64,000 nt of DNA from Octopus sinensis. Its lineage: Eukaryota. Below, piece after piece: positions 12,657-45,167 of this stretch. Below the pieces are notes generated by a model. It did no database searches, was not told where the DNA came from, and saw only the letters and a program-made list of their open reading frames with translations. Position numbers and translations under genes: made by a program. The stretch lies in NCBI RefSeq assembly GCF_006345805.1, contig NC_043007.1:1116001-1180000 (forward strand), read 5' to 3'. Within the stretch, counting starts at the first letter, position 1; the number at the start of each line of letters is the position of its first letter.

Positions 12657-13056
12657 CTCTTCTATTTTTTAATTATTATGTATCTTCCACTGAAGAGGGA
12701 GCCGGCTTCCAATAAAGATACAAGGTTCCATCTCTGGGATGTAGCTAACACAGACGAATTCACATTTGGAACTTGAGAAAAGTCTTGCATATTTTTACTG
12801 TTCCACTCACAGATTGCTCTTGTAATGTACGAATCAGCCGGTCGATTTCTCTTTCTGAAAATCCCAGTTTATCCAGATTCACCTTTAAGCATTTACTTAC
12901 AAAACCTAGTGCTCCAATTATTATTGGTATGAATATAAATTCATAGTCTGGATATAGAAACTGGAGATTTCGAAGAAGTTGTCCATAGATAACCTCTTTT
13001 TCTTTGATTTTCAAAGACATATTTATATCTGCAGGGCAGCTGACTTCTATGCTTAC
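12657..13056 (-). mobile_element. 5'-truncated RLE-type (R2-group) LINE: C-terminal endonuclease region plus 3' UTR
   Basis: VSIEVSCPADINMSLKIKEKEVIYGQL...IPIIIGALG...[14 protein letters not shown], resembling the IDVxxP...EKxxKY RLE pattern. A 3' UTR hairpin follows. (CATA)n lies on both sides. Confidence 0.75.
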
Positions 13057-13162
13057 ATGTATGTATGTATGTATGTATGTATGTATGTATGTATGTATGT
13101 ATGTATGTATGTATGTATGCATGTATGCATGTATGTATGTATTATGTATGTATGTATGTATG

Positions 13163-13195
<33 letters not shown>

Positions 13196-13960
13196 GCATG
13201 TATGCATGTATGTATGTATGTATGTTATGTATGTATGTATGTATGTATGTATGCATTATGTATGTAATGCATGTATGCATGTATGTATTATGTATGTATG
13301 TATGCATGTTGCATGTATGTATTATAGTATGTAATGTATGTATGCATGTATGCATGTATGTATGTAATTATGTATGTATGTATGTATGTATGTATGTAGT
13401 TGTATGCAATGTATGTATGTATGCATGTATGCATGTATATGTATGTATGGTATGTATGTATGTATTATGCATGTATGTATGTATGCCATGTATGTCTGTT
13501 ATGTATTATGTATGTATGTATGTATGTATGTATATGTATGTATGTATGTATGTATGCATGTATGTATGTTTTATGTATGTATGTATGTATGTATGTATGT
13601 ATGCATGCATGCATGTATGTATGTAATGTATGTATGTATGTATGTATTATGCATGTATGTATTATGTATGTATGTATGCATGTATGTATGTATGTATGTA
13701 TGTATGTATGTATGTTGTTATGCATGCATGCATGTTTTATGTATGTCTGTATGCATGTAATGTATGTTATGTATGTATGTATGTAATGTATGTATGTAAT
13801 GTATGTATGCATGCATGCATGTATGTATGTATGTATGTATGTATGCATGCATGCATGTATGTATGTATGTATGTATGTATGCATGTATGTATGTATGTAT
13901 GCATGTATGTATTATGTATGTATGTATGTATGTATGTATGTATGTATGTATGTATGTATG

Positions 13961-13994
<34 letters not shown>

Positions 13995-14010
13995 TGTATG
14001 TATGTACGTA
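13057..14010 (+). repeat. (TATG)n array, about 950 bp
   Basis: Direct reading of the sequence. Confidence 0.97.
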
Positions 14011-14599: not shown

Positions 14600-14847
14600 G
14601 TGTGCTTGTGTCAGTGTTTGTACCCCTATCACCGCTTGACACCCGCTTTAGGACTGTTTACGTTTCCGTAACTTAGCGGTTCGACAGATATGACCGGTAG
14701 AATGATTACCAGGTTTTAAAAAACATACTGGATTCGATTCTTTCGATTAAAAACTCTTGAAGGCGGTGCCCCAGCATGGCCGCTGTCTAATAATTGAAAC
14801 GACTAAAAAATAATGTGGTAGATGGAAACTGAAAGAATCCCGCCATC

Positions 14848-14905
<58 letters not shown>

Positions 14906-15110
14906 TGTTTTTGCTCCCCTCACCATCATGTGACAACCGATGTTGGTGTGTTTACGTCCCACTAAACTAGCGGTTCAGCATAAGAGATCGATATACTAAG
15001 TATCAGGCTTACGAAGAATAAGTCCTGGGGTCGATTTCTTCGACTAAAAAGGCAGTGCTCCAGCATGGCCGCAGTCTCGTGACTGAAACAAGTAAAACAG
15101 TAAAAGAGAT
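14600..15110 (+). mobile_element. Two tandem 5'-truncated family A SINE copies
   Basis: ACTTAGCGGTTC...GGTGCCCCAGCATGGCCG..GACTGAAAC body and tail occur twice. Confidence 0.7.
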
Positions 15111-15559
15111 ATAAACACTGATTTTAGATACAAAAACAAAGAGAGAGAGAGACACACACACACACATACACACACATACACAGACGTAGACACACATAGA
15201 CACACACATCACACACACAACACACACACACACACAAGCACACACACACACACAAGCACACACACAAGCACAACACACACACATACATTAAGAGTTGATT
15301 TACATATTTATACTACCACTTAACAAGCTTACAGAACAGAGTATCATATTTTTCTTTGTCTTTTTCTCTTCATATTTTAATATTTAAGTGATTATGTTTT
15401 TGAAAGAGATTAATTCTACTGTAGGATTGGCCTTGAAACCTTCCTACTTAAAAAAATGTTTAAATATATCTCCTATTTTCTAAGGCCTGCGTGTGTGTGT
15501 GTGTGTGTGTGTGTTTTTGGGAAAAGTGTACAAGTATATTGACAATAAAGAGGCAAAGG

Positions 15560-15764: not shown

Positions 15765-16210
15765 TTGGCAGAATCGTCAGAACGTCAGACACAATGCTTT
15801 GCAACATTGCTTCCGGCTCATTACGATCTAAGTTCAAATCTCGCCGAGATGAATTTGACTTTTAATCTTTTCGGGGGTCGATAAAATAAAGTATCAGTCA
15901 AATAATGGAGCCGATGGTATCGTCTGTCTTACCCCAACCCTCGTATTTCCTGCTCTTTTACTTCAATCAGAAATTATTACTCTCCGGCTCTAAGGCAGCG
16001 AGCTGGCAGAATCGTTAGCACGCCCGGGCAAAATGCTTGGCGGCATTTCATAAGTTTTTACGTCCTGAGTTCAAATTCCACTGAGGTCGGCTTTGCCTTT
16101 CATCCTTTCATGGTCGATAAAATAAGTACCAGTAAAACACTGGGGTCGATGTTATCGACTTATCCCCTCCTACCAAATGGCTGCCCTTGTGCCTCAATCA
16201 GAAATTATTA
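15765..16210 (+). mobile_element. Two family B SINE copies
   Basis: GGCAGAATCGT..AG head and GTTCAAAT.C B-box occur twice. Confidence 0.7.
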
Positions 16211-18462: not shown

Positions 18463-19058
18463 TATTACCTCCGCCCGCCTTAGCGAAGGCGGAGGTATTG
18501 TTTTCAGTTACGTTTGTTTGTTTGTCCGCGGACACGATATCTCAAGAACCGCTGGATAGATTCCAATGAAACTTTCAGGGATGTTTGGCCACGTGACTGG
18601 CACGAACCGTTTAGATTTTGGGATCGATCCGGTACCGGACAAGGATTCTGGATGTTTTGTTATATTTACTTTACAGGGTTACGATCTTACGTTAACTTTG
18701 AAGTCTTTCTCAATTACGCCCCTTTAGACTAACTATTTCGAATGATGAATTTGTTAACGTTGGCTTGTATTAGATAAGGATAAACTATTTATTACTGTTA
18801 CTAACTTTTCTACACCCACCTTCACATTCCATGACTACCATTGGGATCGATCAGGTACCGGACAAGGATTCTGGATTATTTTTCCGGGTATTTTTCTACT
18901 TAATTTTTGAGAGAGGTCGAGTTCATTTTTAGTATTCTCGTTTGTGAGAGCAGTCGAGTTTATTTCAGATATTCTCATTTTAAAAATCATCTCTGGCTAA
19001 TCGTTGAGAGGACGTTGGTGTCGCCTTGGCGGAGGTCTGCGCTCTCTGAGTGCCTCTT
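18463..19058 (+). mobile_element. Helentron-associated non-autonomous element (HINE/DINE-1-like architecture)
   Basis: 5' ACCTCCGCC (18467-18475) with its inverse GGCGGAGGT (18488-18496). 3' subterminal GGCGGAGGT (19028-19036), then a short hairpin GCGCTC-TCT-GAGTGC, with T-rich flanks. A second copy lies at 31175-31745. Confidence 0.65.
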
Positions 19059-19466
19059 ATTATTTATTTATTTATTTTAAAAATTATTGCAATCCACGAT
19101 GCTTTCATAACACGCGTTCGTAGGTACGCTACTTAATTTCCGATTCCCCATCTACAGGAATGCCCACTGATGTTAATGGCAATAACGGTGATATAAATTT
19201 CGCGCTAAAACAAATTGATATATTCAAATGACAGTGTCATACACGCAGTCCTTATTTGTCCTCATTGGCAGAGTTTTTCAAGTGGTTGAAGGAAGCATTC
19301 GGAAAAGAAGAAAAAAGCAAAATTAGAATTTAAGAAATGAAAACTGTTGATTTTAAGATTAAACTTTATTGTTTCGTGGAATACATTGGGTTTATGTTTA
19401 AGCTAATCGCTGAGAGGACATTGGTGTTGCCTTGGCGGAGGTCTGCGCTCTATTAGCACTCTTGTT
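19059..19466 (+). mobile_element. Extension of the HINE-like element ending in a second 3' terminus
   Basis: 19403-19466 duplicates 18997-19058. 19059-19402 is shared with 30833-31174. Confidence 0.6.
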
Positions 19467-20579: not shown

Positions 20580-21050
20580 GTTGTTCTATGTTGTAGTAGT
20601 AGTATGTATGTATGTATGTAGTATGTATGTACTACGTGCGTATGTATGTATGTATGCATGTATGTATGTATGTATGTATGGTATGTATGTTATGTATATG
20701 TATTATGTATGTATGTGTATGTATAATGTATATGATGTATGTATGTATGTATGTATGTATGTATGTGTATGTATTATGTATGTATGTATGTATGTATGTA
20801 TATGTATAGTATTTGTCGTATAATGTATGTATGTATGTATGTATGTATGTATGTATGTATTATGTATGTATGTGTATGTATGTATGTCTATTATGTATGT
20901 ATGTATTATGTTGTATGTATATGTATGTATGTATGGTATGTATGTATGTATGCATGTATTATGTTGTATGTATGTATGTATGTATGTGTATGTATGTATA
21001 TGTATGTATGTGTAGATGTATGTTGTATGTATGTATGTATTCTGTATGTA
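20580..21050 (+). repeat. Degenerate (TATG)n array
   Basis: Direct reading. Contiguous with LINE copy C. Confidence 0.9.
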
Positions 21051-21054
21051 CGCA

Positions 21055-21243
21055 GATTTGTATGTTTTGTTTTACGTATGTATTCTCATACTATAGTTGC
21101 ATATCTAGACATGCTCATATATATCTAAATGCTAAACTTCTGGAAAGTTTTACAGATTTTTACACTTCCAGTGATGGATTGGATCTGTAGTCTTCGAATT
21201 AGCTTTCCCCTTTCTGGTTTTGAGAAGCTTAATTTCTCATGCT
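21055..21243 (-). mobile_element. RLE-type LINE 3' end, copy C
   Basis: Open frame EKLSFSKPERGKLIRRLQIQSITGSVKICKTFQKFSI*. Confidence 0.72.
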
Positions 21244-21785: not shown

Positions 21786-22601
21786 ACAACAACAATAACA
21801 AACCCTTGGCATTATTGCCTCCATGTGTAGGAAGTCTCACACGGCCGTTTACCTGGTTGCCATGGGATGGGATCACAAAACACCTCCTGAGTAGAAGTGC
21901 CAGTTCGTTGCAGAGTAACTGATTTACAGCTGACCAGACTGGAGCAACGTGAAATGAAGTGAATTTCTCAAGAACACAACGCACCAGCGTGAAATCTGCC
22001 TTTAAATTTCCCTGTATCATGATTTGAATTGTTAGATTTATCTCTCCACCCTGAAGACGGCAGCCGGATCTACCCAGTGTTTATTTGCTTCCATAACTAG
22101 TTGCATACTTTTATGAACTACATCTGCCAACATTATGAAATAACTCCGAGCTCCACGAAACAGGTGTCGGACATGTAACACTATACCTTTCCCTTTGTAC
22201 TCTGTATACTCCGTGTAAGTTTGCTCTTTGTACGCTGTATCAGTTTGCTCTGTTAATATATAAATATCTATATATTTGTACTAGAATACTCATCGCCTGA
22301 AAATGTTCAGTCTTTGCTTTCTATACATACGTATATATCTTTATCTTTTACTTGTTTCAGTCATTAAATAGCGGTCATACTGGGGCACCGCCTTGGAGAA
22401 TTTTTAGTCGAATGAATCGACCCCAATACTTACTTTTTACTTACTTTTTTGCGGTTCGGCAAAATAGACATATAGAATAAGTACGAGGCTTACAAAGAAT
22501 AAGTCCTGCTGTCTATATGTGAGACTAAAGGTGGTGCTCCCGCATGGCCGCACTCAAAGACAAACAATAGAAGAAAAGAAAAAAGGAATATATGTATGTG
22601 C

Positions 22602-22846: not shown

Positions 22847-23668
22847 ATATATTATATTATATTATATTAAATTAGAGATAAAACCACTATTAGGCAAATC
22901 AAACAATGAAAAACATAAGCCAATACATAAAATTAATTAATTTATATTATTTAAATTGTATGTATGTATGTATGTAGGTAGGTAGGTAGGTAGGTAGGTA
23001 GGTAGGAAGGTAGGTAGGAAGGTAAGAAGGTAGGTAAGCAATGACGTCATAAAACAGCTGTTGAAGGTGCGTCATTGTTACAAAATGACAACAACAAAGT
23101 TAAAATTTATTCTCAGCCGGTATTGAAAAACAAAATGTCACAAATTGTAAATACAACAGTTTGAATAGCTTTGATGCCGGATCCTTGAAACGATCTGGTC
23201 ATCACTTTGGTCAACCGTCATCGAAATAGATTATTGGCTATGTGGTAAGAAGGTTGCTTTCCAACCACATGGCACCGGGTTCAGTCCCTCACCGTGCCAC
23301 GTTCGGCAAATGTCTTCCACTCTAGCCTCGGACCAACCAAAGCCTTGTGAGCGACTTTGGTTGACGGAAACTGAAAGGAGCTCGTCGTACACACACACAC
23401 TCACATACCTACATATGTATATATGTATGTATATATGTATGTTTGTATGTATGTATATATGTATGTTTGTATGTATGTATGTGTGTGTGTATGTATGTAT
23501 GTATGTATGTATGTATGTATGTATGTATGTATGTATGCATGTATGTATGTATGAATGTATGTATGTAGGCATGTATGCATGCATGCATGCATATATGCAT
23601 ATATGCATGTATGTATGTATGTATGTATGAATATATGTATGCATGTATGCATGTATGCATGTATGTAT

Positions 23669-24078
23669 GTAAATTAATCAAAATAAAAACATGATGCCAA
23701 GGATTCAGCGGTACATATGTTTCGGGCCTTTATTAGACGGATTTATAACAATGCATAATGTGTGTCTATGGCCTTCTTCAGCCGCGCACAACTACTACCT
23801 CAAGGACATGTATTACATCAAAAATTCTACATTGAGAGAAGGACGGGATGGACGCTTCATTTTTATGCTGTTGCCGCATTATGTCGTACGCGAATGAGAG
23901 GATTTGCATCCCCAACGTAGAATTTTTGATGTAATACATGCCCTTGACGTAGTAGTTGTGCGCGGCTGAAGAAGGCCATAGGCACACATTATGCATTGTT
24001 ATAAATCCGTCTAATAAAGGCCCGAAACATATGTACCGCTGAATCCTTGGCATCATGTTTTTATTTTGATTAATTTAC
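23669..24078. mobile_element. Foldback/MITE-like element with 166-bp inverted arms
   Basis: 23669-23834 is the reverse complement of 23913-24078 with 4 mismatches and a 78-bp spacer. TA dinucleotides lie at both ends. Confidence 0.75.
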
Positions 24079-24145
24079 TCCACCACCTACACCACCAAAC
24101 GGTATATACAGGTGCTTACAATTATCAAGTACTCACCCTGAATTT

Positions 24146-25310
24146 ATGTATGTATGTATGTATGTATGTATGTATGTATGTATGCATGTATGCATGCATG
24201 TATGCATGTATGAATGTATGTATGTATGTATGTATGTATGTATGTATGTATTTATGTATGTATGTGTGTATGTGTGTATGTGTGTGTGTATGTATGTATG
24301 TATGTATGTATGTATGTATGTATGTATGTATGTATGTGTGTATGCATGTATGTATGTATGTATGTATATATGTATGTATGTATGTATGCATGCATTCATG
24401 TATGTATGTATGTATGTATGAATGTGTGTATGTATGTATGCATGCATGTATGTATGTATGAATGTATGTATGCATGTATGCATGCATGTATGTATGTATG
24501 AATGTATGTATGAATGTATGTATTTATGTATGTGTGTGTGTATGTATGTATGTATGTATGTATGTATGTATGTATGAATGTGTGTATGTATGTATGAATG
24601 TATGTATGAATGTGTGTATGTATGTATGTGCATGTATGCATGTATGTATGCATGTATGTATGCATGTATGAATGTATGTATGTATGTATGCATGTATGCA
24701 TGTATGCATGCATGTATGCATGTATGAATGTATGTATGTATGTATGTATGTATGTATTTATGTATGTATGTGTGTATGTGTGTATGTGCGTGTGTATGTA
24801 TGTATGTATGTATGTATGTATGTATGTATGTATGTGTGTATGCATGTATGTATGTATGTATGTATATATGTATGTATGTATGTATGCATGCATTCATGTA
24901 TGTATGTATGTATGTATGAATGTGTGTATGTATGTATGCATGCATGTATGTATGTATGAATGTATGTATGAATGTATGTATTTATGTATGTGTGTGTGTA
25001 TGTATGTATGTATGTATGTATGTAGTATGAATGTGTGTATGTATGTATGAATGTATGTATGAATGTGTGTATGTATGTATGTGCATGTATGCATGTATGT
25101 ATGCATGTATGTATGCATGTATGAATGTATGTATGTATGCATGTATGCATGTATGCATGCATGCATGCATGCATGTATGTATGTATGTATGTATGTATGT
25201 ATGTATTATGTATGTATGTATGCATGTATGTATGTATTATGTATGTATGAATGCATGCATGTATGTATGAATGTATGTATGTATGTATGTATGTAGTGTG
25301 TAGGTATGTA
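24146..25310 (+). repeat. (TATG)n array with an internal duplication of about 500 bp
   Basis: Direct reading. Diagnostic variants (TTTA, GCATTCATG) recur about 500 bp apart. Confidence 0.93.
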
Positions 25311-27049
25311 TGTATGTGTGCACTTTCGTATATACGTATAAAACTAGCAGAAAACTGCGTGACACAAGAGTGTCGACTGCTCATTAACATATCATCCCAG
25401 ACATCTATCAATGGGCTACATCAAGTCTCTTTCTCATACCACTCAGATTATGTATATACACCTTCCTAATTAGCAAGGTAGAGAGTCAGATAGGTGGTTA
25501 TCTTATATCATTATAAATATTTATAAGTTGAAAAGCTACAAATAAAACCCCATTTAAATCTCACTTCACTTTACTTATTCTAATTGCAAATCTATCATAC
25601 GAAGGGAAATAAATCAAACATTTCTTTAATTTGTACTTACCTCCCCTGATCGGTTTTAGTAAAATGTGTAAAACAAACTGAACGCTATTTTTTCTGCCTT
25701 CCTTCAAATGCCTCATTAGTGTTTTTATACAATATAATAACTGCACAAAACGATTAGCAATTGTTTTATATCAGAAATACATTATATTAACCACTAAAAG
25801 TCTGGTATTGAGGGTACTCTATATACATATTTACTTTCTTGCACACGATTCTAGATTCTAACGGGTGCAAATGCTAAAATAGTAAAGACTGGTGAAGCCG
25901 TCTTTAGCGATTAATAATTGGGGGAAGTTTCGGATTTTATGCACATTGCAATGTTGTAAATTATATCCATGTTGTATAACATTTTATTTTAAACAAAACT
26001 GTTCACTTTTTATTGAAAATAGAAGAGTATGACAATTAGTCAAGTCCATGCTTAAAACAAATGGAATTTTTTCAAAGTAGCAATAAAATAAATCAATGGA
26101 GGAAAGAAAGGAACAGCATAAATACGTCGTTTGAACAGATACGCCATATTCAAGGAAGGGATTAGAGCGTTCGACTTGTTGGATCTTTCAAAATAGATTT
26201 TAAAATACCATCTTCAGATTGTATCGTGCTTTTACATCATTTGATGTTGAATGGTGAGGAACGATAATGCACTCGGATTTTGCAAAAAAAAAAAAAATAA
26301 AATAAAATAAAATAAAAATTTGCAAAAGGAAAAATAAGAATGATTTTCCGTTCTTTGATAACCTGTCGAACTTGAACTCTTTAAAAAGAAATCCTGTAGA
26401 AAATAATCGGGAATATTCTCTACAAAATAGATATATATTGAGCAGAAAATATTGATAATTTAATAACAATGATTTAGACACTTCTACACAGATTTAGGAA
26501 AATGGGAAACAAGATGAATAAGTAATTGATGGAGCAAAGTAAGAAATAAGATACAGACTACATTACAAAGATATAGATTACAAATCTGTCAAAAGTGAAA
26601 TCAGTCTGCAAATCCATGATTAGTCAATGGTGATAAAACTTACTGGAAGCAATCAAACGATAAGCTAACTTTAATCAGTCTTTAATCTCCCCAATATGTC
26701 AACCATATCTGGTAACGTATAAAACATATCTGACACCTGGTAGGTTTAATAAATGAAGACTTTTGTTGGCTTCAAACGGGCTGCATTCCTTTGGGTTGCA
26801 TTCTTTAGAATACAGATCGCATGGAATCACATTTATGGTATTATGGAGAATACGCAGACACTTTATATTATCTGTTCCAATGCAAAAATTACAAGTCTGG
26901 TCTTTAAACCGTGGTCAAGTTTCAAGGGCCAATTTAATATCAAGGATCCACTAGCCTTAAGCAATTTCCTTCACTTCATGGAGCCCCCCGCCCAAAGATT
27001 TAACTGCAAAAGTAATTGATTTGTTTATATATAATTATTTTATCTTTTC

Positions 27050-27422
27050 TTTTTTAATTCTTTTACTTGTTTCAATCATTTGACTGCGGCCATGCTGGAG
27101 CACCGGCTTTAGTCGAACAAATCGACCCCAGGACTTATTCTATCGGTCTCTTTTGCCGAACCGCAAAGTTACGGTGACGTAGACATACCAACATCGGTTG
27201 TCAAGTGATGGCGGGGTGGGGTGTCAAATAGACACACACACACACATACACACACACACACACACGATGAGCCTCTTTCAGTTTCCCTCTACCAAATCCA
27301 CTCACAAGGTTTTGGTCGGCCTGAGGCTATAGTAGAAGTCACTTGCCCAAGTGTCACACAGTGGGACTGAACCCGGAACCATGTGGTTGGGAAGCAAGCT
27401 TTTTACCACACAGCCACGCCTG
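27050..27422 (-). mobile_element. Family A SINE
   Basis: Same consensus as 2493-2930, reverse complemented. Confidence 0.78.
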
Positions 27423-27763
27423 CACCTATATTAGTACAGCTTCTTCTTCCCTTTTCTTTTTTAAAAAAAAAATTGTGTTTTTCTTACAGTTTATTCTTTT
27501 ATATAAGGGTCAGTTACGGTTTATAAACGTTTTAATTGATTAACTGAACAATCAAATATAAAAATCATTGAAACGTCAGAAGTTATCGTCTGCGTAAATT
27601 ATCTCCCTTTAATTTTTTTTCAAATGGACGATGTTGACATTAAAAATATTTTGTTTATCGTATATTATCGTTGTTGAAAATAAGATATTTCATGAGTTTT
27701 CTAATTCTGAACAGAACTTTTATTATTCACATAGATTATCATTCATAAGGAACTGAGAAATCT

Positions 27764-28200: not shown

Positions 28201-28566
28201 CTTGATTTATGACTCGGCAGTTGACATTTTGTCAAGTCGGTGACCTGACAGAATCGTAACCGTGCCGGACAAAACTGCATAGCAGCATTTCTTCCGAATT
28301 TATGTTTTATATTCAAACGCAACTGGGGCCAATTTTGCCTTTCGGGTGGATAAAATAAGCACCCGATGAGCATTGGGGTAACTATAATCAATTTACCCCG
28401 CTCCGAAATTCCTGGCCTTGTGCCAAAACTTTAAAGCCAGCATTTCATATTATCTTCATGCTGTATTTTTGATGTCCGTTTCTCCTGTCCGTTTAATGCA
28501 TGCTTCACTTATTCGTTGTTGCATCACTGAACAATGTTCGGGGTTATTAAATATCTCAGAGCAACA

Positions 28567-28727
28567 GGCGCAGGAGTGGCTGTGTGGTAAGAAGCTTGCT
28601 TCCCAACCACGTGGTTCCGGGTTCAGTTCCACTGTGTGATAACTTGGGCAAGTGTCTTCTCCTATAGCCTCAGGCCGACCAAAACCTGTGAGTGGATTTG
28701 GTAAATGGAAACTAAAAGAAGCTTGTC

Positions 28728-28776
<49 letters not shown>

Positions 28777-29090
28777 ATATATTTATATATATTATATATA
28801 TACAACACACACGCACATACATGTATGTATGTATGTAATGTATGTATGTATGTATGTACGTATATATATATATGCATATGTGTGTGTGTTTGTTTGTTTG
28901 TGTTTGTCCTCACACCATCGCTTCAAAACTGATGCGTGTGTTTACGTTCCCGTAACTTAGCGGTTCGGCAAATAAGACTGCCAGAATAAGTACTAGGCTT
29001 ACAGAGAATGAGTCCTGGAGTCGAATTTTTCATCTAAAGGCTGTGCTCCAGCATGGCCACAGTCAAATGACTGAAGGAAATATATAAAAA
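28567..29090 (+). mobile_element. Family A SINE, full length
   Basis: GGCGCAGGAGTGGCTGTGTGGTAAG head, core, internal microsatellite and tail. Confidence 0.8.
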
Positions 29091-29220
29091 AAATAGAAAA
29101 GTAATGGAAATAGCGTTGCCTTTATTTCAAAATATTTCTTAATCAAAGGTAGATAACTCTTCCGGGCTGGTGTAACTTATACACGAGTTATTTCCCCTGG
29201 ACTGCAAATGTTTATTTATA

Positions 29221-29622: not shown

Positions 29623-29834
29623 GTTCATTGGCTGTGTGGTAAGAAGCTTGCTTACCAACCACCTGGTTCTGGGTTCAGTCCCACTGCGTGGCACCTTGGG
29701 CAAGTGTCTTCTGAGTGGATTTGGTACTAGGCTTACAATGTATAAGTTCTAGGGTCGATTTGTTTGACTAAAGGCGGTGCTCCATCATGGCCGCAGTCAA
29801 ATTACTGAAACAAGTAAAAGAATAAAACATTATT

Positions 29835-30039: not shown

Positions 30040-30715
30040 ATGAAACAGATAGAAGAGACGGGCTATAAGTACTTGGGGATTTTGGAAATGGACAAATTGA
30101 TGGAGAATCGATGGAGAAAGAAATGACAGAAAAATTTAAGGTGGAGTACTTACACAGACTGAGACTGATCCTTAAGTCGAAATTACACGGAGGGAATAAG
30201 GATGAAGCTATCAACACCTGGGCGGTTTCACTCCGTAGATATGGAGCAGAGGTAATCGCATGGACAGTGGACGAACTAAACAGCTTAGACAGAAAGATAA
30301 GGAAGTTACTAAATAGATATGGGTCACTCCACCCAAAAAGTGACACTGACAGACTGTACGTACCAAGTAAAAGAGAAGGAATAGGACTTATTGGATGCGA
30401 ACACAGCATTAGATCAGAAGAAAACAATATAACATAGTATGTAAAAAATGCCACAGAACCGCTGTTACTAGAAGTAAGAAGGTCAGGCTTGTGTAGGATG
30501 GAAGATTGCAAAGATAAAGCACTATACAAGAAACTGAAAACGAATGGAACTGAAAATAGGAGGGTAAAGAAAAGAATGCATGGTCAATTTCATAGGGATG
30601 TTGAAGATAAGACAGACAGAGAAAAAAGATGGCTGTGGATGACTAAAAGTGATTTAAAACCGGAAACAGATGCTATAATCTGTGCTGCCCAAGAGCAAGC
30701 ACTAAGGACAAACAT
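30040..30715 (+). pseudogene. R4/Dong-clade LINE fragment (post-RT region)
   Basis: IEETGYKYLGILE, EYLHRLRLILKSKL..NK..AINTWAV, HPKSDTDRLYVP..EG.GL, MHGQF, ETDAIICAAQEQALRTN. Confidence 0.85.
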
Positions 30716-30832
30716 AAAGGCGGTCACCTTCACTCACGCGTGCGCGCACACACAACAGAAAACCCTTGAAAGAGGTGCTCCAGCCTGGTCGCAGTCCAAT
30801 GACTGAAACAAGCCAAGAATAAAATTCAAATG

Positions 30833-31745
30833 CCTTAAACATAGACCCATTGTATTCCACGAAACAATAAAGTTTAATCTTTGAAATCAACAGTTTTCAT
30901 TTCTTAAATTTTAATTTTGCATTTTTTTTCTTTTCCGAATGCTTCCTTCAACCACTTGAAAAACTCTGCCAATGAGGACAAATAAGGACTGCGTGTATGT
31001 CACTGTCATTTGAATATATCAATTTGTTTTAGCGCGAAATTTATGTCACCGTTATTGCCATTAACATCAGTGGGCATTCCTGTAGATGGGGAATCGGAAA
31101 TTAACTAGCGTACCTACGAACGCGTGTTATGAAAGCATCGTGGATTGCAATAAGTCAATAAATAAATAAATAATAAGAGGCACTCAGAGAGCACAAACCT
31201 CCGCCAACGCAACACCAACGTCCTCTCAACAATTAACTGGAGATGATTTTTAAAATGAGAATATCTGAAATACACTCGACTGCTCTTACAAACGAGAATA
31301 CTAAAACTGAACCCGACCTCTCTCAAAAATTAAGGCCGGAAAAATAAGCCAGAATCCTTGTCCGGTACCTGATCGATCACAATGGTAGTCATGAAACGTG
31401 AAGGTGGCTGTAGAAAATTTAGTAACAGTAATAAATAGTCTATCCTTATCTAATACAATAAATTCACCATTCAAAATAGTTACAGCCTAAAGGGAGATAA
31501 TTGAGAAAGACTTCAAAGATAACGTAAGATCGTCATCATGTAAAGTAATTATAACAAATAATCCAGAACCCTTGTACGGTACCGGATCGATCCCAAAATG
31601 TAATCAGTTCGTGTCAATCATGACGCCAAACATCCCTGAAAGTTTCACTTGAATTTATCCAATGGTTCTTGAGACATCTTGTCCACAGACAAACAAACAC
31701 GACTGAAAACAATACCTCCGGCTTCGCTAAGGCGGAGGTAATAAA
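30833..31745 (-). mobile_element. Second HINE-like element plus shared 3' flank
   Basis: Reverse complement of 18463-19402 throughout, with the same subterminal repeats and 3' hairpin (31175-31205). Confidence 0.65.
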
Positions 31746-35207: not shown

Positions 35208-35259
<52 letters not shown>

Positions 35260-35266
<7 letters not shown>

Positions 35267-35505
35267 CTTCTTTGAGTCTCAAGTTCTTCGTGAGAGAGTT
35301 CAAGCCGGTTGCTAACAAAGCGACGAAACATTCGGAGTTGAGAGAGTTCCCGGTGTTTGTAAATATGAGGATGAGTTCTAGAGTGCTGGTTGAACCGTCG
35401 ATACATACACCCAAAGTGGGTGCATCTATTCACACAAGAATTTTTGGAATGTTTTGCAAACCTTCACTGTGCTACAAAGAAATAGAATTTGGAGAATCCA
35501 CTGAG
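35260..35505 (-). mobile_element. RLE-type LINE 3' end, divergent subfamily (copy D)
   Basis: ILQILFLCSTVKVCKTFQKFLCE*, then a different UTR. (CATA)n lies on the 5' side and (CA)n on the 3' side. Confidence 0.5.
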
Positions 35506-36860
35506 TATGTATGTATGTATGTATGTATGTATGTATGTATGTATGTATGTATGTATGTATGTATGTATGTATGTATGTATGTATGTATGTATGTATGTAT
35601 GTATGTATGTATGCATGATGTATGTATGTATGTATGTATGTATGCATGTATGTATGTATGTATGCATGTATGTATGTATGTATGTATGTAGGATGTATGT
35701 ATGTATGTATGTATGTATGTATGTATGTATGTATGTATGTATGTATGTATGAATGTATGTATGTATGTATGTATGCATGTATGTATGTATGTATGTATGT
35801 ATGTATGTATGTATGTATGTATGTATGTATGTATGTATGTATGTATGTATGTATGTATGTATGTATGTATGTATGTATGTATGTATGTATGTATGCATGT
35901 ATGTATGTATGTATGCATGTGTATGTATGTATGCATGTATGTGTGTATGTATGTATGTATGTATGTATGTATGCATGTATGTATGTATGTATGCATGTAT
36001 GTATGTATGTATGTATGTAGGAATGTATGTATGTATGTATGTGATGTATGTATGTAGTATGTATGTATTTATGTATGCATGTATGTATGTATTATGATGT
36101 ATGTATGTATGTATGTATGCATGTATGTATGTATGTATGTATGTATGTATGTATGCATGTATGTATGTATGAATGTATGTATGTATGTATGTATGTATGT
36201 ATGTATGTATGTATGTATGCATGTATGTATGTATGTATGCATGTATGTGTGTATGTATGTATGTAGGAATGTATGTATGTATGTATGCATGCATGTATGT
36301 GTGTATGTATGTATGTATGTATGTAGGAATGTATGCATGCATGTATGTGTGTATGTATGTATGTATGTATGTATGTAGGAATGTATGTATGTATGTATGT
36401 ATGTATGTATGTATGTATGTTTGTATGTATGTATGCATGTATGTATGTATGTATGCATGTATGTATGTATGTATGTATGCATGTATGTATGTATGTATGT
36501 ATGTAGGAATGTATGTATGTATGTATGTAGGAATGTATGTATGTATGTATATATGTATGTATGTATGTATGCATGCATTCATGTATGTATGTATGTATGT
36601 AGGAATGTATGTATGTATGTATGTATCTATGTATGCATGCATGCATGCATGCATGTATGTATGTATGTATGTATGTATGTATGCATGTATGTATGCATGC
36701 ATTCATGCATGCATGTATGTATGTATGTATGCATGTATGTATGTATGTATGCATGCATGTATGTATGTATGTATGTATGCATTTATGTATGCATGTATGT
36801 ATGTATGTATGTATATATATACGTATGTATGTATGCATGTATGTATGTGTGTGTATGTAT
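35506..36860 (+). repeat. (TATG)n array, about 1.35 kb
   Basis: Direct reading of the sequence. Confidence 0.97.
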
Positions 36861-36884
36861 GTAGAAAGATGAGGGAGAGAGATA

Positions 36885-37190
36885 TGGGGAAACAGTGAAA
36901 TAGATGCAGTTAAAACTGAGTGAAGATGTATATACAGTTTCTATAGATATAAAAGTACAATATAATCGTGAAATCTCGTCGTACGCAACCCGAGTATAAA
37001 CGCATGACGTCACAAATGTCAATGTATTTAAGAGTCTTTGTTTTTCTTGTAATGTGAGTTAAATGAAAACAAGATATTATTTGTAGAATCGCTTTGGGTG
37101 TTTCACTGGATATGTGACACGTTTACTGACATCTGTGAGAATAAGCGAAAATAAAATAGAAATTAGGACGGATAAGTTCGGTGTGCGTGT
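36885..37190 (+). repeat. Unclassified repeat of about 310 bp, copy 1 (copy 2 at 39185-39500)
   Basis: Shared blocks ATATAAAAGTACAA, TCGTGAAATCTCGTC, GCAACCC.AGTATAAA and CATCTGTGAGAATAAG occur in the same order. Confidence 0.7.
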
Positions 37191-37399
37191 TCTTGGCTGA
37201 GAATGAGCACCAGACAAACACTAAGCCTAGCACTTTCTTCCCTCAGCTTCTCGGCTTCCCCGCGAGGTCGGGGAAGTCGAGAAGCTGTTTGTGTCTGCCC
37301 GCAATGTGCAAACGCACCGAACATAATAACAGAATAACCGAATAACAGAACAAGCGAAAGCGTGGTACATGTGAGGGAGTCTAACGACGATTGACTCAT

Positions 37400-38871
37400 T
37401 CGTATGTATGTATGTATGTATGCATGTATGTATGTATGTATGTATGTATGTATGTATGTATGTATGTATGTATGTATGTATGCATGCATGCATGTATGTA
37501 TGTATGTATGTATGTATGTATGTATGTATGTATGCATGTATGTATGTATGTATGTATGTATGTATGTATGCATGTATGTATGTATGTATGTATGTATGTA
37601 TGTATGCATGCATGCATGCATGCATGTATGTATGTATGTATGTATGTATGTATGTATGTATGCATGCATGTATGTATGTATGTATGTATGTATGTATGTA
37701 TGTATGTATGCATGTATGTATGTATGTATGTATGTATGTATGAATGTATGTATGTATGTATGTATGTATGTATGTATGTATGCATGTATGTATGTATGCA
37801 TGCATGCATGCATGCATGTATGTATGTATGTATGTATGTATGCATGTATGTATGTATGTATGTATCTATGTATGTATGTATGTATGTATGTATGTATGTA
37901 TGAATGTATGTATGTATGTATGTATGAATGTATGTATGTATGTATGTATGTATGTATGCATGTATGTATGTATGTATGTATGTATTTATGTATGTATGTA
38001 TGTATTTATGTATGTATGTATGTATGTATGTATGTATGTATGTATGTATGTATGTATGCATGCATGCATGCATGCATGTATGTATGTATGTATGTATGTA
38101 TGTATGTATGTATGCATGCATGTATGTATGTATGTATGTATGTATGTATGTATGTATGTATGTATGTATGTATGTATGTATGTATGTATGTATGTATGCA
38201 TGCATGTATGTATGTATGTATGCATGTATGTATGTATGAATGTATGTATGTATGAATGTATGTATGTATGTATGTATGTATGTATGTATGTATGTATGTA
38301 TACATGTATGCATGCATGCATGCATGCATGCATGTATGTATGTATGTATGTATGTATGTATGTATGTATGAATGTATGTATGTATGAATGTATGTATGTA
38401 TGTATGTATGTATGCATGTATGTATGTATGTATGTATGTATGTATGTATGTATTTATGTATGTATGTATTTATGTATGTATGAATGTATACATGTATGTA
38501 TGTATGTATGTATGTATGCATGCATGTATGTATGTATGTATGTATTTATGTATGTATGCATGTATGTATGCATGTATGTTTGTATGTATGTATTTATGTA
38601 TGTATGTATGTCATTATTCAGTTTTATTCCAAGATTTCTTGCAATAGAGAAAGGGCCGGTTTCTAACATGTATGTATGTATGTATGTTTGTATGTATGTA
38701 TGTATGTATGTATGTATGTATGAATGTATGCATGTATGTATGTATGTATGTATGTATGTATGTATGTATGTATGTATGCATGCATGTATGTATGTATGTA
38801 TGTATTTATGTATGTATGCATGTATGTATGCATGTATGTTTGTATGTATGTATTTATGTATGTATGTATGT
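37400..38871 (+). repeat. (TATG)n array, about 1.45 kb, containing a duplicated LINE terminus at 38611-38669
   Basis: Direct reading of the sequence. Confidence 0.95.
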
Positions 38872-39124
38872 CATTATTCAGTTTTATTCCAAGATTTCTT
38901 GCAATAGAGAAAGGGCCGGTTTCTAACATAGACCCGAGGCTCCTTCCTTGGAATTTCAACATCAACAACAGGGTATTTTTTATTTCTTTGTATGTATATG
39001 TGGAAATTTGTATGCTTTGTTTTATGTATGTCTTCTCATGCACAAACTTTCATATCAAGAAATGCTCATATATACTTAAATGATAAACTTCTGGAAAGTT
39101 TTACAGATTTTTACAGTTCCAGTC
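38872..39124 (-). mobile_element. RLE-type LINE 3' end, copy E, with complete UTR and (CATA)n tail
   Basis: TGTVKICKTFQKFII*, a short internal CATA tract, and an AATAAAACTGAATAATGA(CATA)n end. Confidence 0.72.
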
Positions 39125-39184
39125 AAACAGAAATTCCAGTCATATTCCAGTCTCAGTCGTGTAGAAAGACAAATGAGAGCAATG

Positions 39185-39500
39185 TCGGGAGACAGTGAAA
39201 GAGATGCAATTAAAAGAGAGCGAAGACGTATATTTCTATAAATATAAAAGTACAACATACTCGTGAAATCTCGTCTGATTGCAACCCAAGTATAAAAACA
39301 TGATGTCATAACTGTTATTGCAGTTAAGACTTTTAAGACGATTTGTTTTCTTAGTAATGATATCATGGTAAGTGTGTTAAATGAAGGCAAGATATATTTG
39401 TTGAATCGGTTTGGGAATTTTACTGGAAATGTGACATTTTTTCTCTGTCATCTGTGAGAATAAGTTGAAAGAAAATATGAATGAGGTCAGATAAATTAGT
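39185..39500 (+). repeat. Unclassified repeat of about 310 bp, copy 2
   Basis: Colinear with 36885-37190. Confidence 0.7.
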
Positions 39501-40156: not shown

Positions 40157-40367
40157 CATTATTCAGTTTTATTTCAAGATTTCTTGTCAATAGAGAAAGA
40201 ACCGGTTACTGACCTAGATCCAAGGTTCCTTCATTGGAATTTTAACACCAACAACAGGGTATTTTTGTTTATATGTATGTGCGTGTGTGTGTGTGTATGT
40301 ATGTATGTATGTATGTATGTATGTATGTATGTATGTATACATGCATGTATGTATGTATGTATGTATG

Positions 40368-40401
<34 letters not shown>

Positions 40402-40479
40402 TGTATGTATGTATATATGCATGTATGTATGTATGTATGTATGTAAATATGTATGTATGTATGTATATATGTATGTATG

Positions 40480-40513
<34 letters not shown>

Positions 40514-40661
40514 TACATGCATGTATGTATGTATGTATGTATGTATGTATGTATGTATGTATATGCAGATTTGTATGTTTTATGTATGTTTCTCATGCAT
40601 ATAGTTTCATATCTAGAAATGCTCATATATATTTAAATGATAAACTTCTGAAATGTTTTAC
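40157..40661 (-). mobile_element. RLE-type LINE 3' end, copy F, with an expanded internal (CATA)n of about 300 bp
   Basis: CKTFQKFII*. The UTR halves match copy E but are separated by (TATG)n at 40265-40565. Confidence 0.7.
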
Positions 40662-40718
40662 ACACACATACACACACATGCACACACACACACACACACA
40701 CATACACACACACATATA

Positions 40719-42358: not shown

Positions 42359-42635
42359 TATATATATATGTATATATACACAAAGACCACACACACACAC
42401 AAACACACACACATATATGTATACGACGGGCTTCTTTCAGTTTCTGTCTACAAATGTATTCACAAAGATTTGGGCGACCCGAGGCTATAGTAGAAGACTT
42501 GCTCAATGTGCCATACAGTAGGACTGAACCCGGAACCATGTGGTTGGGAAACAATTTTCCTACCACAAAGCCATGCCTGTGCCTATATATATATATATAT
42601 ATATATATATTTAATTATGATGATGATGATGATGA

Positions 42636-44320: not shown

Positions 44321-45167
44321 GCAATGTTCAACTTTGCAATGACCACCTTAGAAATGCTCAACTTCGTAATAATCAGCTTTGTAATGATCAACTTCGTAAT
44401 GATCAACTTCGTAATGATCAACTTCGTAATGATCAACTTTGTAATGATCAACTTTGTAATGATCAACTTTGTAATGCTCAACTTCGTAATAATCAATTTT
44501 GTAATGATCAACTTCGTAATGATCAACTTTGTAATGATCAACTTTATAATGATCAACTTTGTAATGATCAACTTTGTAATGATCAACTTTGTAATGATCA
44601 ACTTCGTAATGATCAACTTTGTAATGATCAATTTTGTAATGATCAACTTTGTAATGATCAACTTTGTAATGCTCAACTTTGTAATGATCAACTTTGTAAT
44701 GATCAACTTTGTAATGATCAACTTTGTAATGATCAACTTTGTAATGATCAACTTTGTAATGCTCAACTTTGTAATGATCAACCATGTAATGATCAACTTT
44801 GTAATGATCAACTTTGTAATGATCAACTTTGTAATGCTCAACTTTGTAATGATCAACTTTGTAATGATCAACTTTGTAATGATCAACTTTATAATGATCA
44901 ACTTCGTAATGTTCAACTTTGTAATGATGAACTTTGTAATGCTCAACTTTGTAATGATCAGCTTTGTAATGATCAACTTTGTAATGATCAACTTCGTAAT
45001 GATCAACTTCGTAATGATCAACTTTGTAATGATCAACTTTGTAATGATGAACTTTGTAATGCTCAACTTCGTAATAATCAACATTGTAATGATCAATTTT
45101 GTAATGACCAGCATATGAACTGATTGACTTTGTAAATGAATATTCAATTCCATAATGATCAACTTAC
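44321..45167 (+). repeat. 15-bp minisatellite GTAATGATCAACTTY, about 52 units plus degenerate units reaching the splice donor
   Basis: Direct reading of the sequence. Confidence 0.95.

What the first reader, a model, noticed from the sequence alone, without database searches (positions are those of the whole stretch)
12657..13056. RLE-type LINE family tied to (CATA)n: a possible microsatellite-targeting and -seeding retroelement
Seen: this 5'-truncated element encodes [45 protein letters not shown] and sits between two (CATA)n arrays. Six other short repeats (4021, 4398, 21055, 35260, 38872, 40157) that look like anonymous SINE-like pieces encode the homologous end, with consensus YVTHCLNT.L.KLGFSKPE.RKLIRRLQIQSITGTVKICKTFQKF*. 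All seven are on the minus strand and all touch (CATA)n. Known: RLE-bearing non-LTR elements (R2, R4/Dong) are often sequence-specific, and Dong targets (TAA)n. Inference: a lineage that tails with, and perhaps inserts into, CATA tetramers could explain the kilobase TATG arrays here. Caveat: copies C, E and F lack CATA at their 5' junction, so strict targeting is unproven.
Basis: partly seen in the sequence, partly recalled or inferred. Interest (0 to 1): 0.8.

Follow-up and report, generated by a model that had tools for sequence, protein, structure and literature searches.

The report
Microsatellite-targeting LINE tied to CATA repeats
The flagged 400 bases are the broken-off tail end of a jumping gene (a Dong/R4-like LINE with a restriction-like endonuclease) whose lineage inserts into, and carries, CATA repeat tracts; this is a new target for a known kind of element, not a new kind of element.

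Summary
Window 13056->12657 (minus strand) is a 5'-truncated non-LTR retrotransposon copy. It keeps the last 98 codons of a restriction-like endonuclease (RLE) domain and a ~100-nt 3' UTR, and sits between (CATA)n tracts of 954 and 62 bp.

The seven copies are not one family. Five belong to one family (A, B, C, E, F+G). The focal copy is a diverged relative. Copy D ends in (CA)n.

Full-length relatives from public assemblies encode about 1150 aa: an N-terminal three-helix region without zinc fingers, then RT, CCHC and PD..E..K. Their best structural match is R2. They are flanked on both sides by sense-strand (CATA)n (L023, L028; L027 and L030 at the 5' side) or by the one-base variant (TTAC)n (L022, L003, L008). 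That supports insertion into the repeat, as known for Dong and (TAA)n.

A 3' UTR hairpin shows covariation across the lineage.

In the window, all 6 independent 3' ends abut CATA (p about 1e-6). Only 2-3 of 6 5' ends do. Three long arrays have no element upstream, and arrays also grow by internal duplication. Seeding of the kilobase arrays is therefore plausible but unproven.

Verdict: a new member (new target motif) of a known kind. Interest is moderate.

The parts
12657..13056 (-). Focal 5'-truncated RLE-LINE copy: ORF remnant 13056->12763 (98 codons), stop codon 12762-12760, 3' UTR 12759->12657
   Evidence: Translation and ORF list. 55-66% aa identity to the C-termini of RT+RLE proteins. 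The profile of full-length relatives matches at E = 3.9e-32.
12697..12730 (-). 3' UTR hairpin motif (aCC-TT-GTATCT-TTATT-GGAAGC-C-GGc), partly decayed in this copy
   Evidence: Covariance-model match, 28.6 bits, E = 6.5e-6 (this sequence was in the training set). Pair counts.
13057..14010 (-). (CATA)n array directly 5' of the focal copy
   Evidence: TRF; sequence; junction.
12595..12656 (-). (CATA)15 directly 3' of the focal copy (tail or rest of the target), followed by (GATA)n 12219-12594
4021..4394 (-). Family-1 copy A: ORF end, UTR1, 31-bp internal (CATA)n (4129-4159), UTR2 with hairpin (4060-4093), decayed tail. Its 5' junction lies in the CATA tract of copy B.
4397..4716 (-). Family-1 copy B (4716->4501: ORF end + UTR1, no UTR2) plus its 103-bp (CATA)n (4499-4397). 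Head-to-tail with copy A.
20587..21243 (-). Family-1 copy C (21243->21050: ORF end + UTR1, no UTR2) plus a 464-bp (CATA)n array. 5' junction in (GA)n.
38872..39124 (-). Family-1 copy E: last 14 codons, UTR1, UTR2 with hairpin (38911-38944). 5' junction in non-CATA sequence next to the end of repeat X.
35505..38871 (-). 3.4-kb (CATA)n array 3' of copy E. It holds a non-CATA island (about 36870-37400) and a duplicated 58-bp end of E (38612-38669).
   Evidence: TRF; self-alignment 37402-38669 vs 37658-38929 at 90.9%; sequences.
40157..40665 (-). Family-1 copy F/G: last 9 codons, UTR1 (40646-40563), internal (CATA)n expanded to 291 bp (40562-40272), UTR2 with hairpin (40197-40230), (CATA)3 tail. 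5' junction in (GT)n.
35210..35485 (-). Copy D: related but distinct family. Last ~15 codons, its own 3' UTR with a weak hairpin match (35300-35332), (CA)n tail 35264-35210.
   Evidence: Covariance-model hit E = 0.07; sequence.
58772..64000 (+). Comparator in the same window: a decayed Dong-like RLE-LINE (RT 58863-59827, CCHC 59818-60144, C-terminal end to 60399). It has (ATA)n at its 5' side (58772-58841) and 3.5 kb of (AAT)n at its 3' side (60480-64000).
   Evidence: Hairpin of the same layout in its 3' UTR.

Best explanation
The focal sequence is a dead, 5'-truncated copy of a non-LTR retrotransposon from a Dong/R4-like lineage. A full-length member has a single ORF of about 1150 aa. [quoted passage not shown]

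Shown:
- Members of this lineage lie in tetranucleotide microsatellites in one fixed orientation, with the repeat on both sides of full-length copies. The repeat is (CATA)n for the window's families and for L023, L027, L028 and L030. It is the one-base variant (TTAC)n, or (TTGC)n, for sister families.
- The 3' UTR ends in a conserved hairpin 40-70 nt before the repeat.

Inferred from the R2 paradigm:
- The protein binds the hairpin-bearing 3' UTR of its own RNA.
- Its N-terminal domain and RLE recognise and nick the microsatellite.
- The nicked (TATG)n strand primes reverse transcription, helped by pairing with the few CAUA units at the end of the RNA.
- Incomplete reverse transcription gives the 5'-truncated copies seen here.

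Because each new copy brings CATA units with it, it both interrupts old arrays and creates new landing sites. This would explain the head-to-tail pairs (B-A here; L028; L003). Family 1 also carries an internal CATA tract that differs in length between copies (about 10, 31 and 291 bp), so element-borne tracts do expand. Copies B and C stop at that tract. They may come from priming at the internal repeat or from later deletion between repeats.
For: Identity of the protein:
- 25 homologues at E = 4e-33 to 8e-6 extend upstream into HN(K/R)PD and CCHC.
- A full-length ORF in L003 has RVT_1 at E = 2.6e-23.
- CCHC, the D of PD and the K are invariant in 23 proteins (motifs).
- Best PDB sequence hits are R2 proteins, E about 1e-20.
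- An AlphaFold model (pLDDT 80.6) matches R2 TPRT complexes best, E = 3e-34 to 1e-27, ahead of LINE-1 ORF2p.
- No zinc-finger pattern occurs in the first ~400 aa. Helices 21-37, 43-54 and 63-75 span a conserved W...W block.

Target:
- L023 is full length, with (CATA)19 at the 5' side and (ATAC)8..(ACAT)9 at the 3' side.
- L027 has (CATA)41 at the 5' side. L028 is a tandem of truncated copies joined by (CATA)7-50.
- L030 has mixed (ATAC)/(TTAC) at the 5' side.
- (TTAC)n flanks occur in L003, L008, L009, L019, L020, L022 and L024, and (TTAC)(TTGC)n in coral-metagenome copies.
- In the window, 6 of 6 3' ends abut CATA, p = 1.5e-6.

Hairpin: 87% of cells are paired versus 24-50% when the partner is slid. 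7 of 9 pairs have compensatory changes, and 0 of 500 shuffles reach the observed score. Non-training hits occur in L019, L008 and L009.

Relationship: the RT neighbour-joining tree puts the CATA and TTAC elements in one clade (50-61% identity). The next clade holds the window's (TAA)n-flanked Dong-like element (33-38%). The two outgroup proteins used are at 23-28%.

[quoted passage not shown] Most RLE clades are target specific (PMC4640811).
Against: - Three of six window copies (C, E, F/G) have no CATA at the 5' junction, and 5' enrichment in the window alone is not significant.
- No reference sequences (Dong, R4, Rex6, Hero, NeSL) could be fetched. Clade placement therefore rests on architecture, target type and proximity to an unnamed (TAA)n-flanked element.
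- No HDV-like 5' ribozyme, which is reported for Dong and R4 (PMC3774820), was found by Rfam or by a crude descriptor.
- Pfam gives no Myb hit.
- Several relatives come from short metagenome contigs that may be the same locus sampled repeatedly (L003-L007; L013-L016).
- No activity, transcription or empty site was examined.
Confidence: 0.8

Rival explanations
1. This is a tail-bearing but non-targeting LINE. The element merely ends in a (CATA)n tail, as many LINEs end in short tandem repeats (from general knowledge, not checked here), and it inserts anywhere. CATA at 5' junctions arises only because new copies sometimes land in the tails of old ones.
For: C, E and F/G have (GA)n, non-CATA sequence and (GT)n at their 5' junctions. 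5' enrichment in the window is p = 0.13. L024 has (ATA)n at the 5' side and (CTTA)n at the 3' side. Coral copies keep element-proximal TTAC units before a TTGC array, which suggests that the first units are element-borne.
Against: Full-length copies carry long arrays of the same repeat at the 5' side: (CATA)19 in L023, (CATA)41 in L027, (CTTA)13+11 in L022, and L020 and L030 as well. The orientation relative to the repeat is always the same. Related Dong elements are accepted as (TAA)n specific (PMC7998251, PMC3812793). 5' flanks can be lost through target deletion at the 5' junction, so non-CATA 5' flanks do not exclude targeting.
Confidence: 0.12
2. Passive co-accumulation. CATA arrays and LINE debris pile up independently in a repeat-rich, low-recombination region, and their adjacency is incidental.
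For: The window is dense with microsatellites of many kinds and with other repeats. Three long CATA arrays have no element upstream. Arrays grow by internal duplication.
Against: All 6 element 3' ends join CATA at the same point of the element and in the same phase (.. aataatg|acatacata), p = 1.5e-6. The same junctions recur in unrelated datasets.
Confidence: 0.03
3. An anatomical rival for family 1. The ~112-bp UTR2 unit is a separate SINE-like non-autonomous element that shares the LINE's 3' hairpin and inserts into the CATA tails of B/C-type LINE copies. On this view A, E and F/G are composites.
For: B and C end after UTR1 + (CATA)n with no UTR2. UTR2 starts at the same base in A, E and F, as a discrete unit would. 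The CATA spacer before it varies from about 10 to 291 bp.
Against: In the focal copy and in all relatives, the hairpin-bearing module follows the ORF within the same element. No free-standing UTR2 copy exists in the window; the one candidate is an array duplication. Three composites out of five copies would need very frequent hits.
Confidence: 0.15

Closest known systems
Dong (Bombyx mori and relatives; R4 clade of RLE non-LTR retrotransposons)
   Same: Single ORF with RT + CCHC + RLE. No N-terminal zinc fingers, and a Myb/SANT-like N-terminus (PMC7998251). Orientation-specific insertion into a microsatellite, with the repeat on both flanks. A (TAA)n-flanked Dong-like copy in this window shares 33-38% RT identity, the GALG..LQ..GT..I.K C-terminal block and the 3' hairpin layout.
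   Different: The target is the tetranucleotide (CATA)n, or (TTAC)n/(TTGC)n/(CA)n in sister families, instead of (TAA)n. The lineage forms its own clade in the RT tree. The 5' HDV-like ribozyme reported for Dong (PMC3774820) was not found.
R4 (Ascaris) and R2 (arthropods, birds): rDNA-specific RLE LINEs
   Same: Same enzyme architecture and, by inference, the same TPRT mechanism, with recognition of the 3' UTR RNA. R2 proteins are the best sequence and fold matches among solved structures.
   Different: They target 28S rDNA. R2 also has N-terminal zinc fingers, which are absent here.
Waldo (R1 clade, APE-type), specific for (ACAY)n microsatellites in Anopheles and Forficula (PMC3812793)
   Same: Essentially the same target motif: (ACAT)n is (CATA)n.
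   Different: An unrelated endonuclease type (APE at the N-terminus, against RLE at the C-terminus here). No Exo_endo_phos domain is present in the relatives. This is convergent target choice.
Togen (NeSL-related, (TG)n specific) and microsatellite-specific HERO families (PMC4640811)
   Same: RLE LINEs that target simple repeats.
   Different: Other RLE clades. The relationship could not be tested because no reference sequences were available.
Transposable elements that carry or spread microsatellites (RTE in Lepidoptera, PMC2887409; TEs as SSR carriers in penaeid shrimp, PMC7878876)
   Same: Element-borne simple repeats that spread and expand, which is the 'seeding' idea.
   Different: PMC2887409 concerns RTE retrotransposons, which to my knowledge have an APE-type endonuclease and are not reported to insert specifically into the repeat they carry. 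PMC7878876 concerns several kinds of transposable element and reports no such targeting.

Membership tests
R4/Dong clade (RLE non-LTR retrotransposons) | Single ORF with a central reverse transcriptase | tested here: met
   Relatives only, because the focal copy is 5'-truncated. RVT_1 at E = 2.6e-23 in the L003 ORF. All full-length homologues carry PF00078.
R4/Dong clade (RLE non-LTR retrotransposons) | C-terminal CCHC motif followed by a PD-(D/E)xK restriction-like endonuclease | tested here: met
   C955, C958, H967, C972, D1042 and K1073 are invariant in 23 proteins; motifs. The focal copy keeps the E..K half (VSIEVSCP..KEKEVIY).
R4/Dong clade (RLE non-LTR retrotransposons) | No N-terminal zinc fingers | tested here: met
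   No C..C...H/C pattern in the first ~400 aa of 13 full-length proteins.
R4/Dong clade (RLE non-LTR retrotransposons) | Diverged N-terminal Myb/SANT-like domain (PMC7998251) | tested here: inconclusive
   A conserved W(T/S)xE...G(Y/F)M.R.K..W block is predicted as three helices with pLDDT 78-88. There is no Pfam Myb hit, and no separate fold search of the domain was run.
R4/Dong clade (RLE non-LTR retrotransposons) | Site-specific insertion into rDNA or a microsatellite | tested here: met
   The same sense-strand repeat lies on both flanks of full-length copies L023 (CATA) and L022 (TTAC). Tandem L028 and the 5' arrays in L027, L030 and L020 agree.
R4/Dong clade (RLE non-LTR retrotransposons) | RT phylogeny groups it with the reference elements Dong and R4 | not testable with these tools
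   No reference sequences could be fetched. Proxy: the neighbouring clade holds a (TAA)n-flanked Dong-like element, and it is closer than the two distant outgroup proteins used (P0065 and an APE-type LINE, P0066).
R4/Dong clade (RLE non-LTR retrotransposons) | HDV-like self-cleaving ribozyme at the 5' end (PMC3774820) | tested here: inconclusive
   No Rfam ribozyme hit at gathering threshold or at E <= 5. A crude P1-P4 descriptor found nothing convincing at seven 5' ends. Such ribozymes are hard to detect.
R2 clade | N-terminal zinc finger(s) plus Myb, and insertion into 28S rDNA | tested here: not met
   No zinc fingers. The flanks are microsatellites, not rDNA. Only the overall fold and RT similarity are shared.
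Waldo / R1 clade (ACAY-specific) | N-terminal APE-type endonuclease | tested here: not met
   No Exo_endo_phos domain in the L003 full-length ORF (Pfam scan), and none on record among the precomputed Pfam hits of the other full-length relatives. A C-terminal RLE is present instead.

The most novel reading that the evidence does not exclude
A widespread sub-clade of Dong-like RLE LINEs (at least in coral-associated and other metagenome-derived animal DNA, and in this genome) has repeatedly switched between microsatellite targets that differ by one base: (TACA)n, (TACT)n, (TGCT)n, and also (CA)n. Each family carries the matching repeat at its own 3' end behind a conserved hairpin. On this reading, target choice is set largely by pairing between the RNA tail and the nicked repeat. 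The elements would be a main engine that plants and spreads tetranucleotide arrays in this microsatellite-rich genome.
Probability: 0.3. Interest if true: 0.6.

Novelty: new member of a known kind. Interest (0 to 1): 0.4.

Why it matters
Microsatellite-specific RLE LINEs are known, with Dong and (TAA)n as the textbook case, so the principle is not new. Three points add something.

1. This is an RLE lineage aimed at (CATA)n and its one-base variants. In the papers I could search, that motif is reported only for the unrelated APE-type Waldo elements. It would be a case of convergent target choice and of easy target switching within one clade.
2. A short 3' UTR hairpin with clear covariation gives a concrete handle on RNA recognition outside R2.
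3. The element carries CATA tracts that differ in length between copies, while it interrupts other CATA arrays. That makes it a tractable system for asking how far retroelements create the simple-repeat load of repeat-rich animal genomes.

Site-specific RLE LINEs are also being studied as gene-insertion tools, so natural variants with simple, re-targetable sites are of some practical interest.

Tried and rejected
- Pfam on the 98-aa peptide gave nothing. The RLE end has no Pfam model.
- A search for the source organism with an SLC22-like exon found no candidate. The window's own peptide is not in the protein collection. The species stays unknown.
- The protein search with the full-length relative returned no named relatives apart from a distant APE-LINE from Anolis. 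No name-based classification was therefore possible.
- Rfam at gathering and at E-value thresholds gave only spurious mir-297-type hits on the CATA repeats themselves.
- A home-made HDV-like ribozyme descriptor gave no convincing hit.
- I first counted the UTR2 fragment at 38669-38612 as an independent insertion inside the array. I rejected this after finding that its downstream repeat variants are identical to those after copy E, which marks a 256-bp tandem duplication.
- I considered that the copies might be segmental duplicates. I rejected this because similarity stops at the element ends.
- L029 and L031 gave no information on tails. In L029 the contig ends before the tail, and L031 ends in poly(A).
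- The shared minus-strand orientation of all copies and arrays is suggestive, but there are only about five independent loci, so I did not treat it as significant.

Full report
WHAT IS THERE

On the minus strand, window 13056->12657 begins abruptly after a 954-bp (CATA)n array (13057-14010). An open frame of 98 codons follows (VSIEVSCPADINMSLKIKEKEVIYGQL...IPIIIGALGFVSKCL...[14 protein letters not shown]). After it come about 100 nt of untranslated sequence, then (CATA)15 (12656-12595) and a (GATA)n array. The window as a whole is AT-rich eukaryotic DNA packed with microsatellites and interspersed repeats. I could not identify the organism.

THE OTHER COPIES

They fall into three families.

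Family 1 (82-88% DNA identity):
- A, 4394->4021
- B, 4716->4501
- C, 21243->21050
- E, 39124->38872

The full 3' part of family 1 reads: ORF end (..GTVKICKTFQKFSI*), UTR1 (~90 nt), a short internal (CATA)n, UTR2 (~112 nt), then the (CATA)n tail. The internal tract is about 10 bp in E, 31 bp in A and 291 bp in F/G. B and C stop at this tract and lack UTR2.

The focal copy is a diverged relative. It has 47-53% aa identity to A and B, and its 3' UTR matches only the UTR2 profile (E = 9.6e-6).

D (35485->35265) has its own 3' UTR and a (CA)n tail.

A 58-bp UTR2 fragment inside the 3.4-kb array (38669->38612) is followed by exactly the same variant repeats as copy E. It lies in a 1.27-kb self-match offset by 256 bp. 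It therefore records a tandem duplication of the array and not an insertion. Similarity between copies stops at the element ends, so the copies are separate insertions and not segmental duplicates.

WHAT THE PEPTIDE IS

The protein search found 25 homologues (E = 4e-33 to 8e-6). They extend upstream into HN(K/R)PD(I/L) and then ..(I/V)E(F/V)SCPxDxN..EK...Y..L, which is a PD-(D/E)xK nuclease.

One of them led to locus L003. There a neighbouring 1149-aa ORF carries RVT_1 (E = 2.6e-23), a CCHC knuckle (CRLCKNQVEDMFHVISSC) and the same nuclease and C-terminal block.

In an alignment of 23 such proteins, the four CCHC residues, the D of PD and the K are invariant. None has a zinc-finger pattern in the first ~400 residues. 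All share an N-terminal W(T/S)xE...G(Y/F)M.R.K..W block.

R2 proteins are the best sequence matches among solved structures (E about 1e-20, RT region). An AlphaFold model of P0028 (pLDDT 80.6) predicts three helices over the N-terminal block. Its best fold matches are R2 proteins caught in target-primed reverse transcription (E = 3e-34 to 1e-27), ahead of LINE-1 ORF2p and Prp8.

A profile of the C-terminal end finds 3,633 cluster representatives at E <= 1e-3 and 631 at E <= 1e-10 among 1.84 billion proteins. The lineage is therefore large.

IS THE TIE TO CATA REAL?

In the window, CATA-type tracts cover 8.9% of the sequence. All six independent family-1 and focal 3' ends join CATA at the same element position (..aataatg|acatacata..agaagag|acatacata), p = 1.5e-6.

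At the 5' side, only the focal copy and A sit in clean CATA. B sits in a short degenerate CATA-like stretch. C, E and F/G sit in (GA)n, non-CATA sequence next to the end of another interspersed repeat (repeat X), and (GT)n. That is 2 of 6 (p = 0.13) or 3 of 6 (p = 0.02).

The decisive evidence comes from relatives:
- L023, a 4.5-kb JGI metagenome contig, is a full-length element (1217-aa ORF) with (CATA)19 at its 5' end and (ATAC)8..(ACAT)9 at its 3' end.
- P0028 is the closest full-length relative of the focal peptide (62.5% identity). In L027 it is preceded by (CATA)41.
- L028 is a head-to-tail tandem of 5'-truncated copies, each joined to the next by (CATA)7-50.
- L030 has (ACAT)8(ATAC)13(TTAC)14(ATAC)7 at its 5' end.

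Sister families show the same pattern with (TTAC)n:
- L022 is full length with the repeat on both sides.
- L020 and L019 have it at the 5' side. L024, L008, L009 and L003 have it at the 3' side or on both sides.
- Copies from Tara Pacific coral metagenomes end in (TTAC)1-3 followed by (TTGC)n.

The repeat is always on the sense strand. (TACA)n, (TACT)n and (TGCT)n differ by single bases.

RELATION TO DONG

The same window holds a decayed element on the plus strand (58863-60399) with RT, CCHC (CRICGKFTETIDHVVSGC) and a C-terminal ..LGTVSKNL...LQKTALLGTARILRKVLE*. It has (ATA)n at its 5' side and 3.5 kb of (AAT)n at its 3' side, which is the classic Dong situation. L025 and L026 are similar and also end in (TAA)n.

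A neighbour-joining tree on 329 RT columns puts the CATA and TTAC elements in one clade (50-61% identity to each other). Within it, CATA and TTAC users are interleaved. The neighbouring clade contains the (TAA)n element (33-38%). The two outgroup proteins used are at 23-28%.

The literature states that R4/Dong elements have RT plus an RLE, lack N-terminal zinc fingers, have a diverged Myb/SANT-like domain and insert into rDNA or microsatellites. It also states that Dong targets (TAA)n in insects, molluscs and cnidarians (PMC7998251). Other sources report that most RLE clades are target specific (PMC4640811) and list the known microsatellite targets: ACAY (Waldo), AC (Mino), TC (Kibi), TTC (Koshi), TAA (Dong) and TG (Togen) (PMC3812793, PMC4640811).

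I found no report of an RLE element aimed at (CATA)n or (TTAC)n, but I could not query Repbase or Dfam.

A CONSERVED 3' HAIRPIN

Forty to seventy nucleotides before the repeat, all families carry gCC-TT-[6 nt]-TTGTT-[6 nt]-C-GGc, in which the two hexamers are complementary but differ between families:
- GTTATC/GATAAC in L028
- GCTATA/TATAGC in L023
- GATTTC/GAAATC in L022 and L024
- GTCTCC/GGAGAC in L003

On a 12-sequence alignment, 87% of cells pair, against 24-50% when the 3' partner is slid. Seven of nine pairs show changes on both sides. No shuffle out of 500 reaches the observed covariation.

I derived the structure from these sequences, which favours it somewhat. However, a covariance model built from them also finds untrained instances in L019, L008 (followed by (TTAC)n) and L009, and weakly in copy D. 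The window's (TAA)n element has the same layout (CCTT-a-GTTCAC-tggta-GTGAAC). In the window's family-1 copies and the focal copy the stem is partly decayed.

HOW IT MOST LIKELY WORKS

Shown: the domain set, the fixed orientation in the repeat, the repeat on both flanks of full-length copies, the head-to-tail tandems, the conserved hairpin and the variable internal CATA tract.

Inferred by analogy with R2:
- The protein binds the hairpin-bearing 3' UTR of its RNA.
- The N-terminal domain and the RLE recognise and nick the repeat.
- The nicked (TATG)n strand primes cDNA synthesis, probably aided by pairing with terminal CAUA units.
- Abortive synthesis yields the 5'-truncated copies.

Non-CATA 5' junctions may reflect insertion at an array edge, target deletion at the 5' junction, or occasional off-target insertion that plants a new CATA tract. 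For E, the upstream flank is a repeat (X) whose other copy is followed directly by CATA. This hints that E landed at the start of an existing tract. B and C may result from priming at the internal tract or from deletion between tracts.

SEEDING

Element-borne tracts do change length: about 10, 31 and 291 bp at the same internal position. Four of the seven CATA arrays of 100 bp or more have a family element at their upstream edge (4397-4499, 20587-21050, 35505-38871 and 40272-40562).

Against this, arrays 13057-14010, 23414-23671 and 24145-25317 have none. The last two are one array split by a 410-bp insertion with inverted ends. The largest array grows by 256-bp duplications. Seeding is therefore plausible for some arrays and unproven as the general cause.

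VERDICT

This is a real feature, correctly recognised as an RLE LINE tied to (CATA)n. It is best filed as a Dong/R4-like, microsatellite-specific element with a new target motif: a new member of a known kind. Three caveats stand: formal clade placement was not possible, no 5' ribozyme was found, and the host is unknown. No step had to be referred.

Noticed in passing
window 58772-64000 (+): Decayed Dong-like RLE LINE (RT, CCHC, internal deletion of the nuclease core) with (ATA)n at its 5' side and at least 3.5 kb of (AAT)n running to the end of the window. It is a second, classic microsatellite-targeting LINE in the same window.
   Followed up: partly
window 36870-37175 and 39160-39494 (-): Two copies (75% identity) of an unclassified ~330-bp repeat 'X' ending ..tctttctac. 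One is followed directly by (CATA)n inside the 3.4-kb array, the other by copy E. X may itself be a CATA-tailed non-autonomous element.
   Followed up: partly
window 23669-23834 / 23913-24078: A 166-bp inverted repeat (97.6% identity) forms a ~410-bp palindromic insertion that splits one (CATA)n array into 23414-23671 and 24145-25317. It looks like a MITE or foldback element.
   Followed up: no
window 10245-12175 (+): APE-type LINE fragment (Exo_endo_phos at 10245-10622, RVT_1 at 11210-11821). It is unrelated to the RLE families and ends at a (TACC)n/(GATA)n tract.
   Followed up: no
window 30069-30803 (+): Fragment of another R4-like element (profile positions 713-939, E = 2e-29 and 7e-12), truncated at both ends.
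   Followed up: no
window 18475-19402 vs 30834-31735: A 931-bp inverted duplication (89.8% identity), 11 kb apart, of unknown nature.
   Followed up: no
window 44323-45107: A 15-bp satellite (AATGATCAACTTTGT), 52 copies, 91% matches.
   Followed up: no
window around 7000-7060: A run of N (seen as X in ORF translations 6762-7394). This is an assembly gap next to the (CT)n and (AGA)n tracts.
   Followed up: no
window 1428-2933, 9316-9463, 14845-15115, 22451-22575, 23235-23442, 27033-27431, 28566-29098, 29629-29827, 42384-42588: An abundant ~200-400-bp interspersed repeat family (75-95% identity, both orientations), probably a SINE or MITE. A second family lies at 7426-8105, 8805-9315, 15992-16177, 46145-46380 and 51175-51439.
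   Followed up: no
window 57009-57284 (-): ORF resembling a transmembrane exon of an SLC22-type transporter. It is the only candidate host-gene piece seen, and the protein search found no relative.
   Followed up: partly
L028 (ENA ERZ25072740 ctg115731, flagged circular, 18 kb): The contig consists of head-to-tail 5'-truncated CATA-LINE copies. Each has a ~450-nt internal 14-nt minisatellite (gtctatattgtctg-like) in its 3' UTR.
   Followed up: partly
L003 3460-3530 and 7800-7870: The full-length (TTAC)n element sits after a duplicated 70-bp piece of the CCHC-coding region of a second family, which ends in ..ttacttac. This suggests insertion at an internal TTACTTAC site or a template switch.
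   Followed up: no
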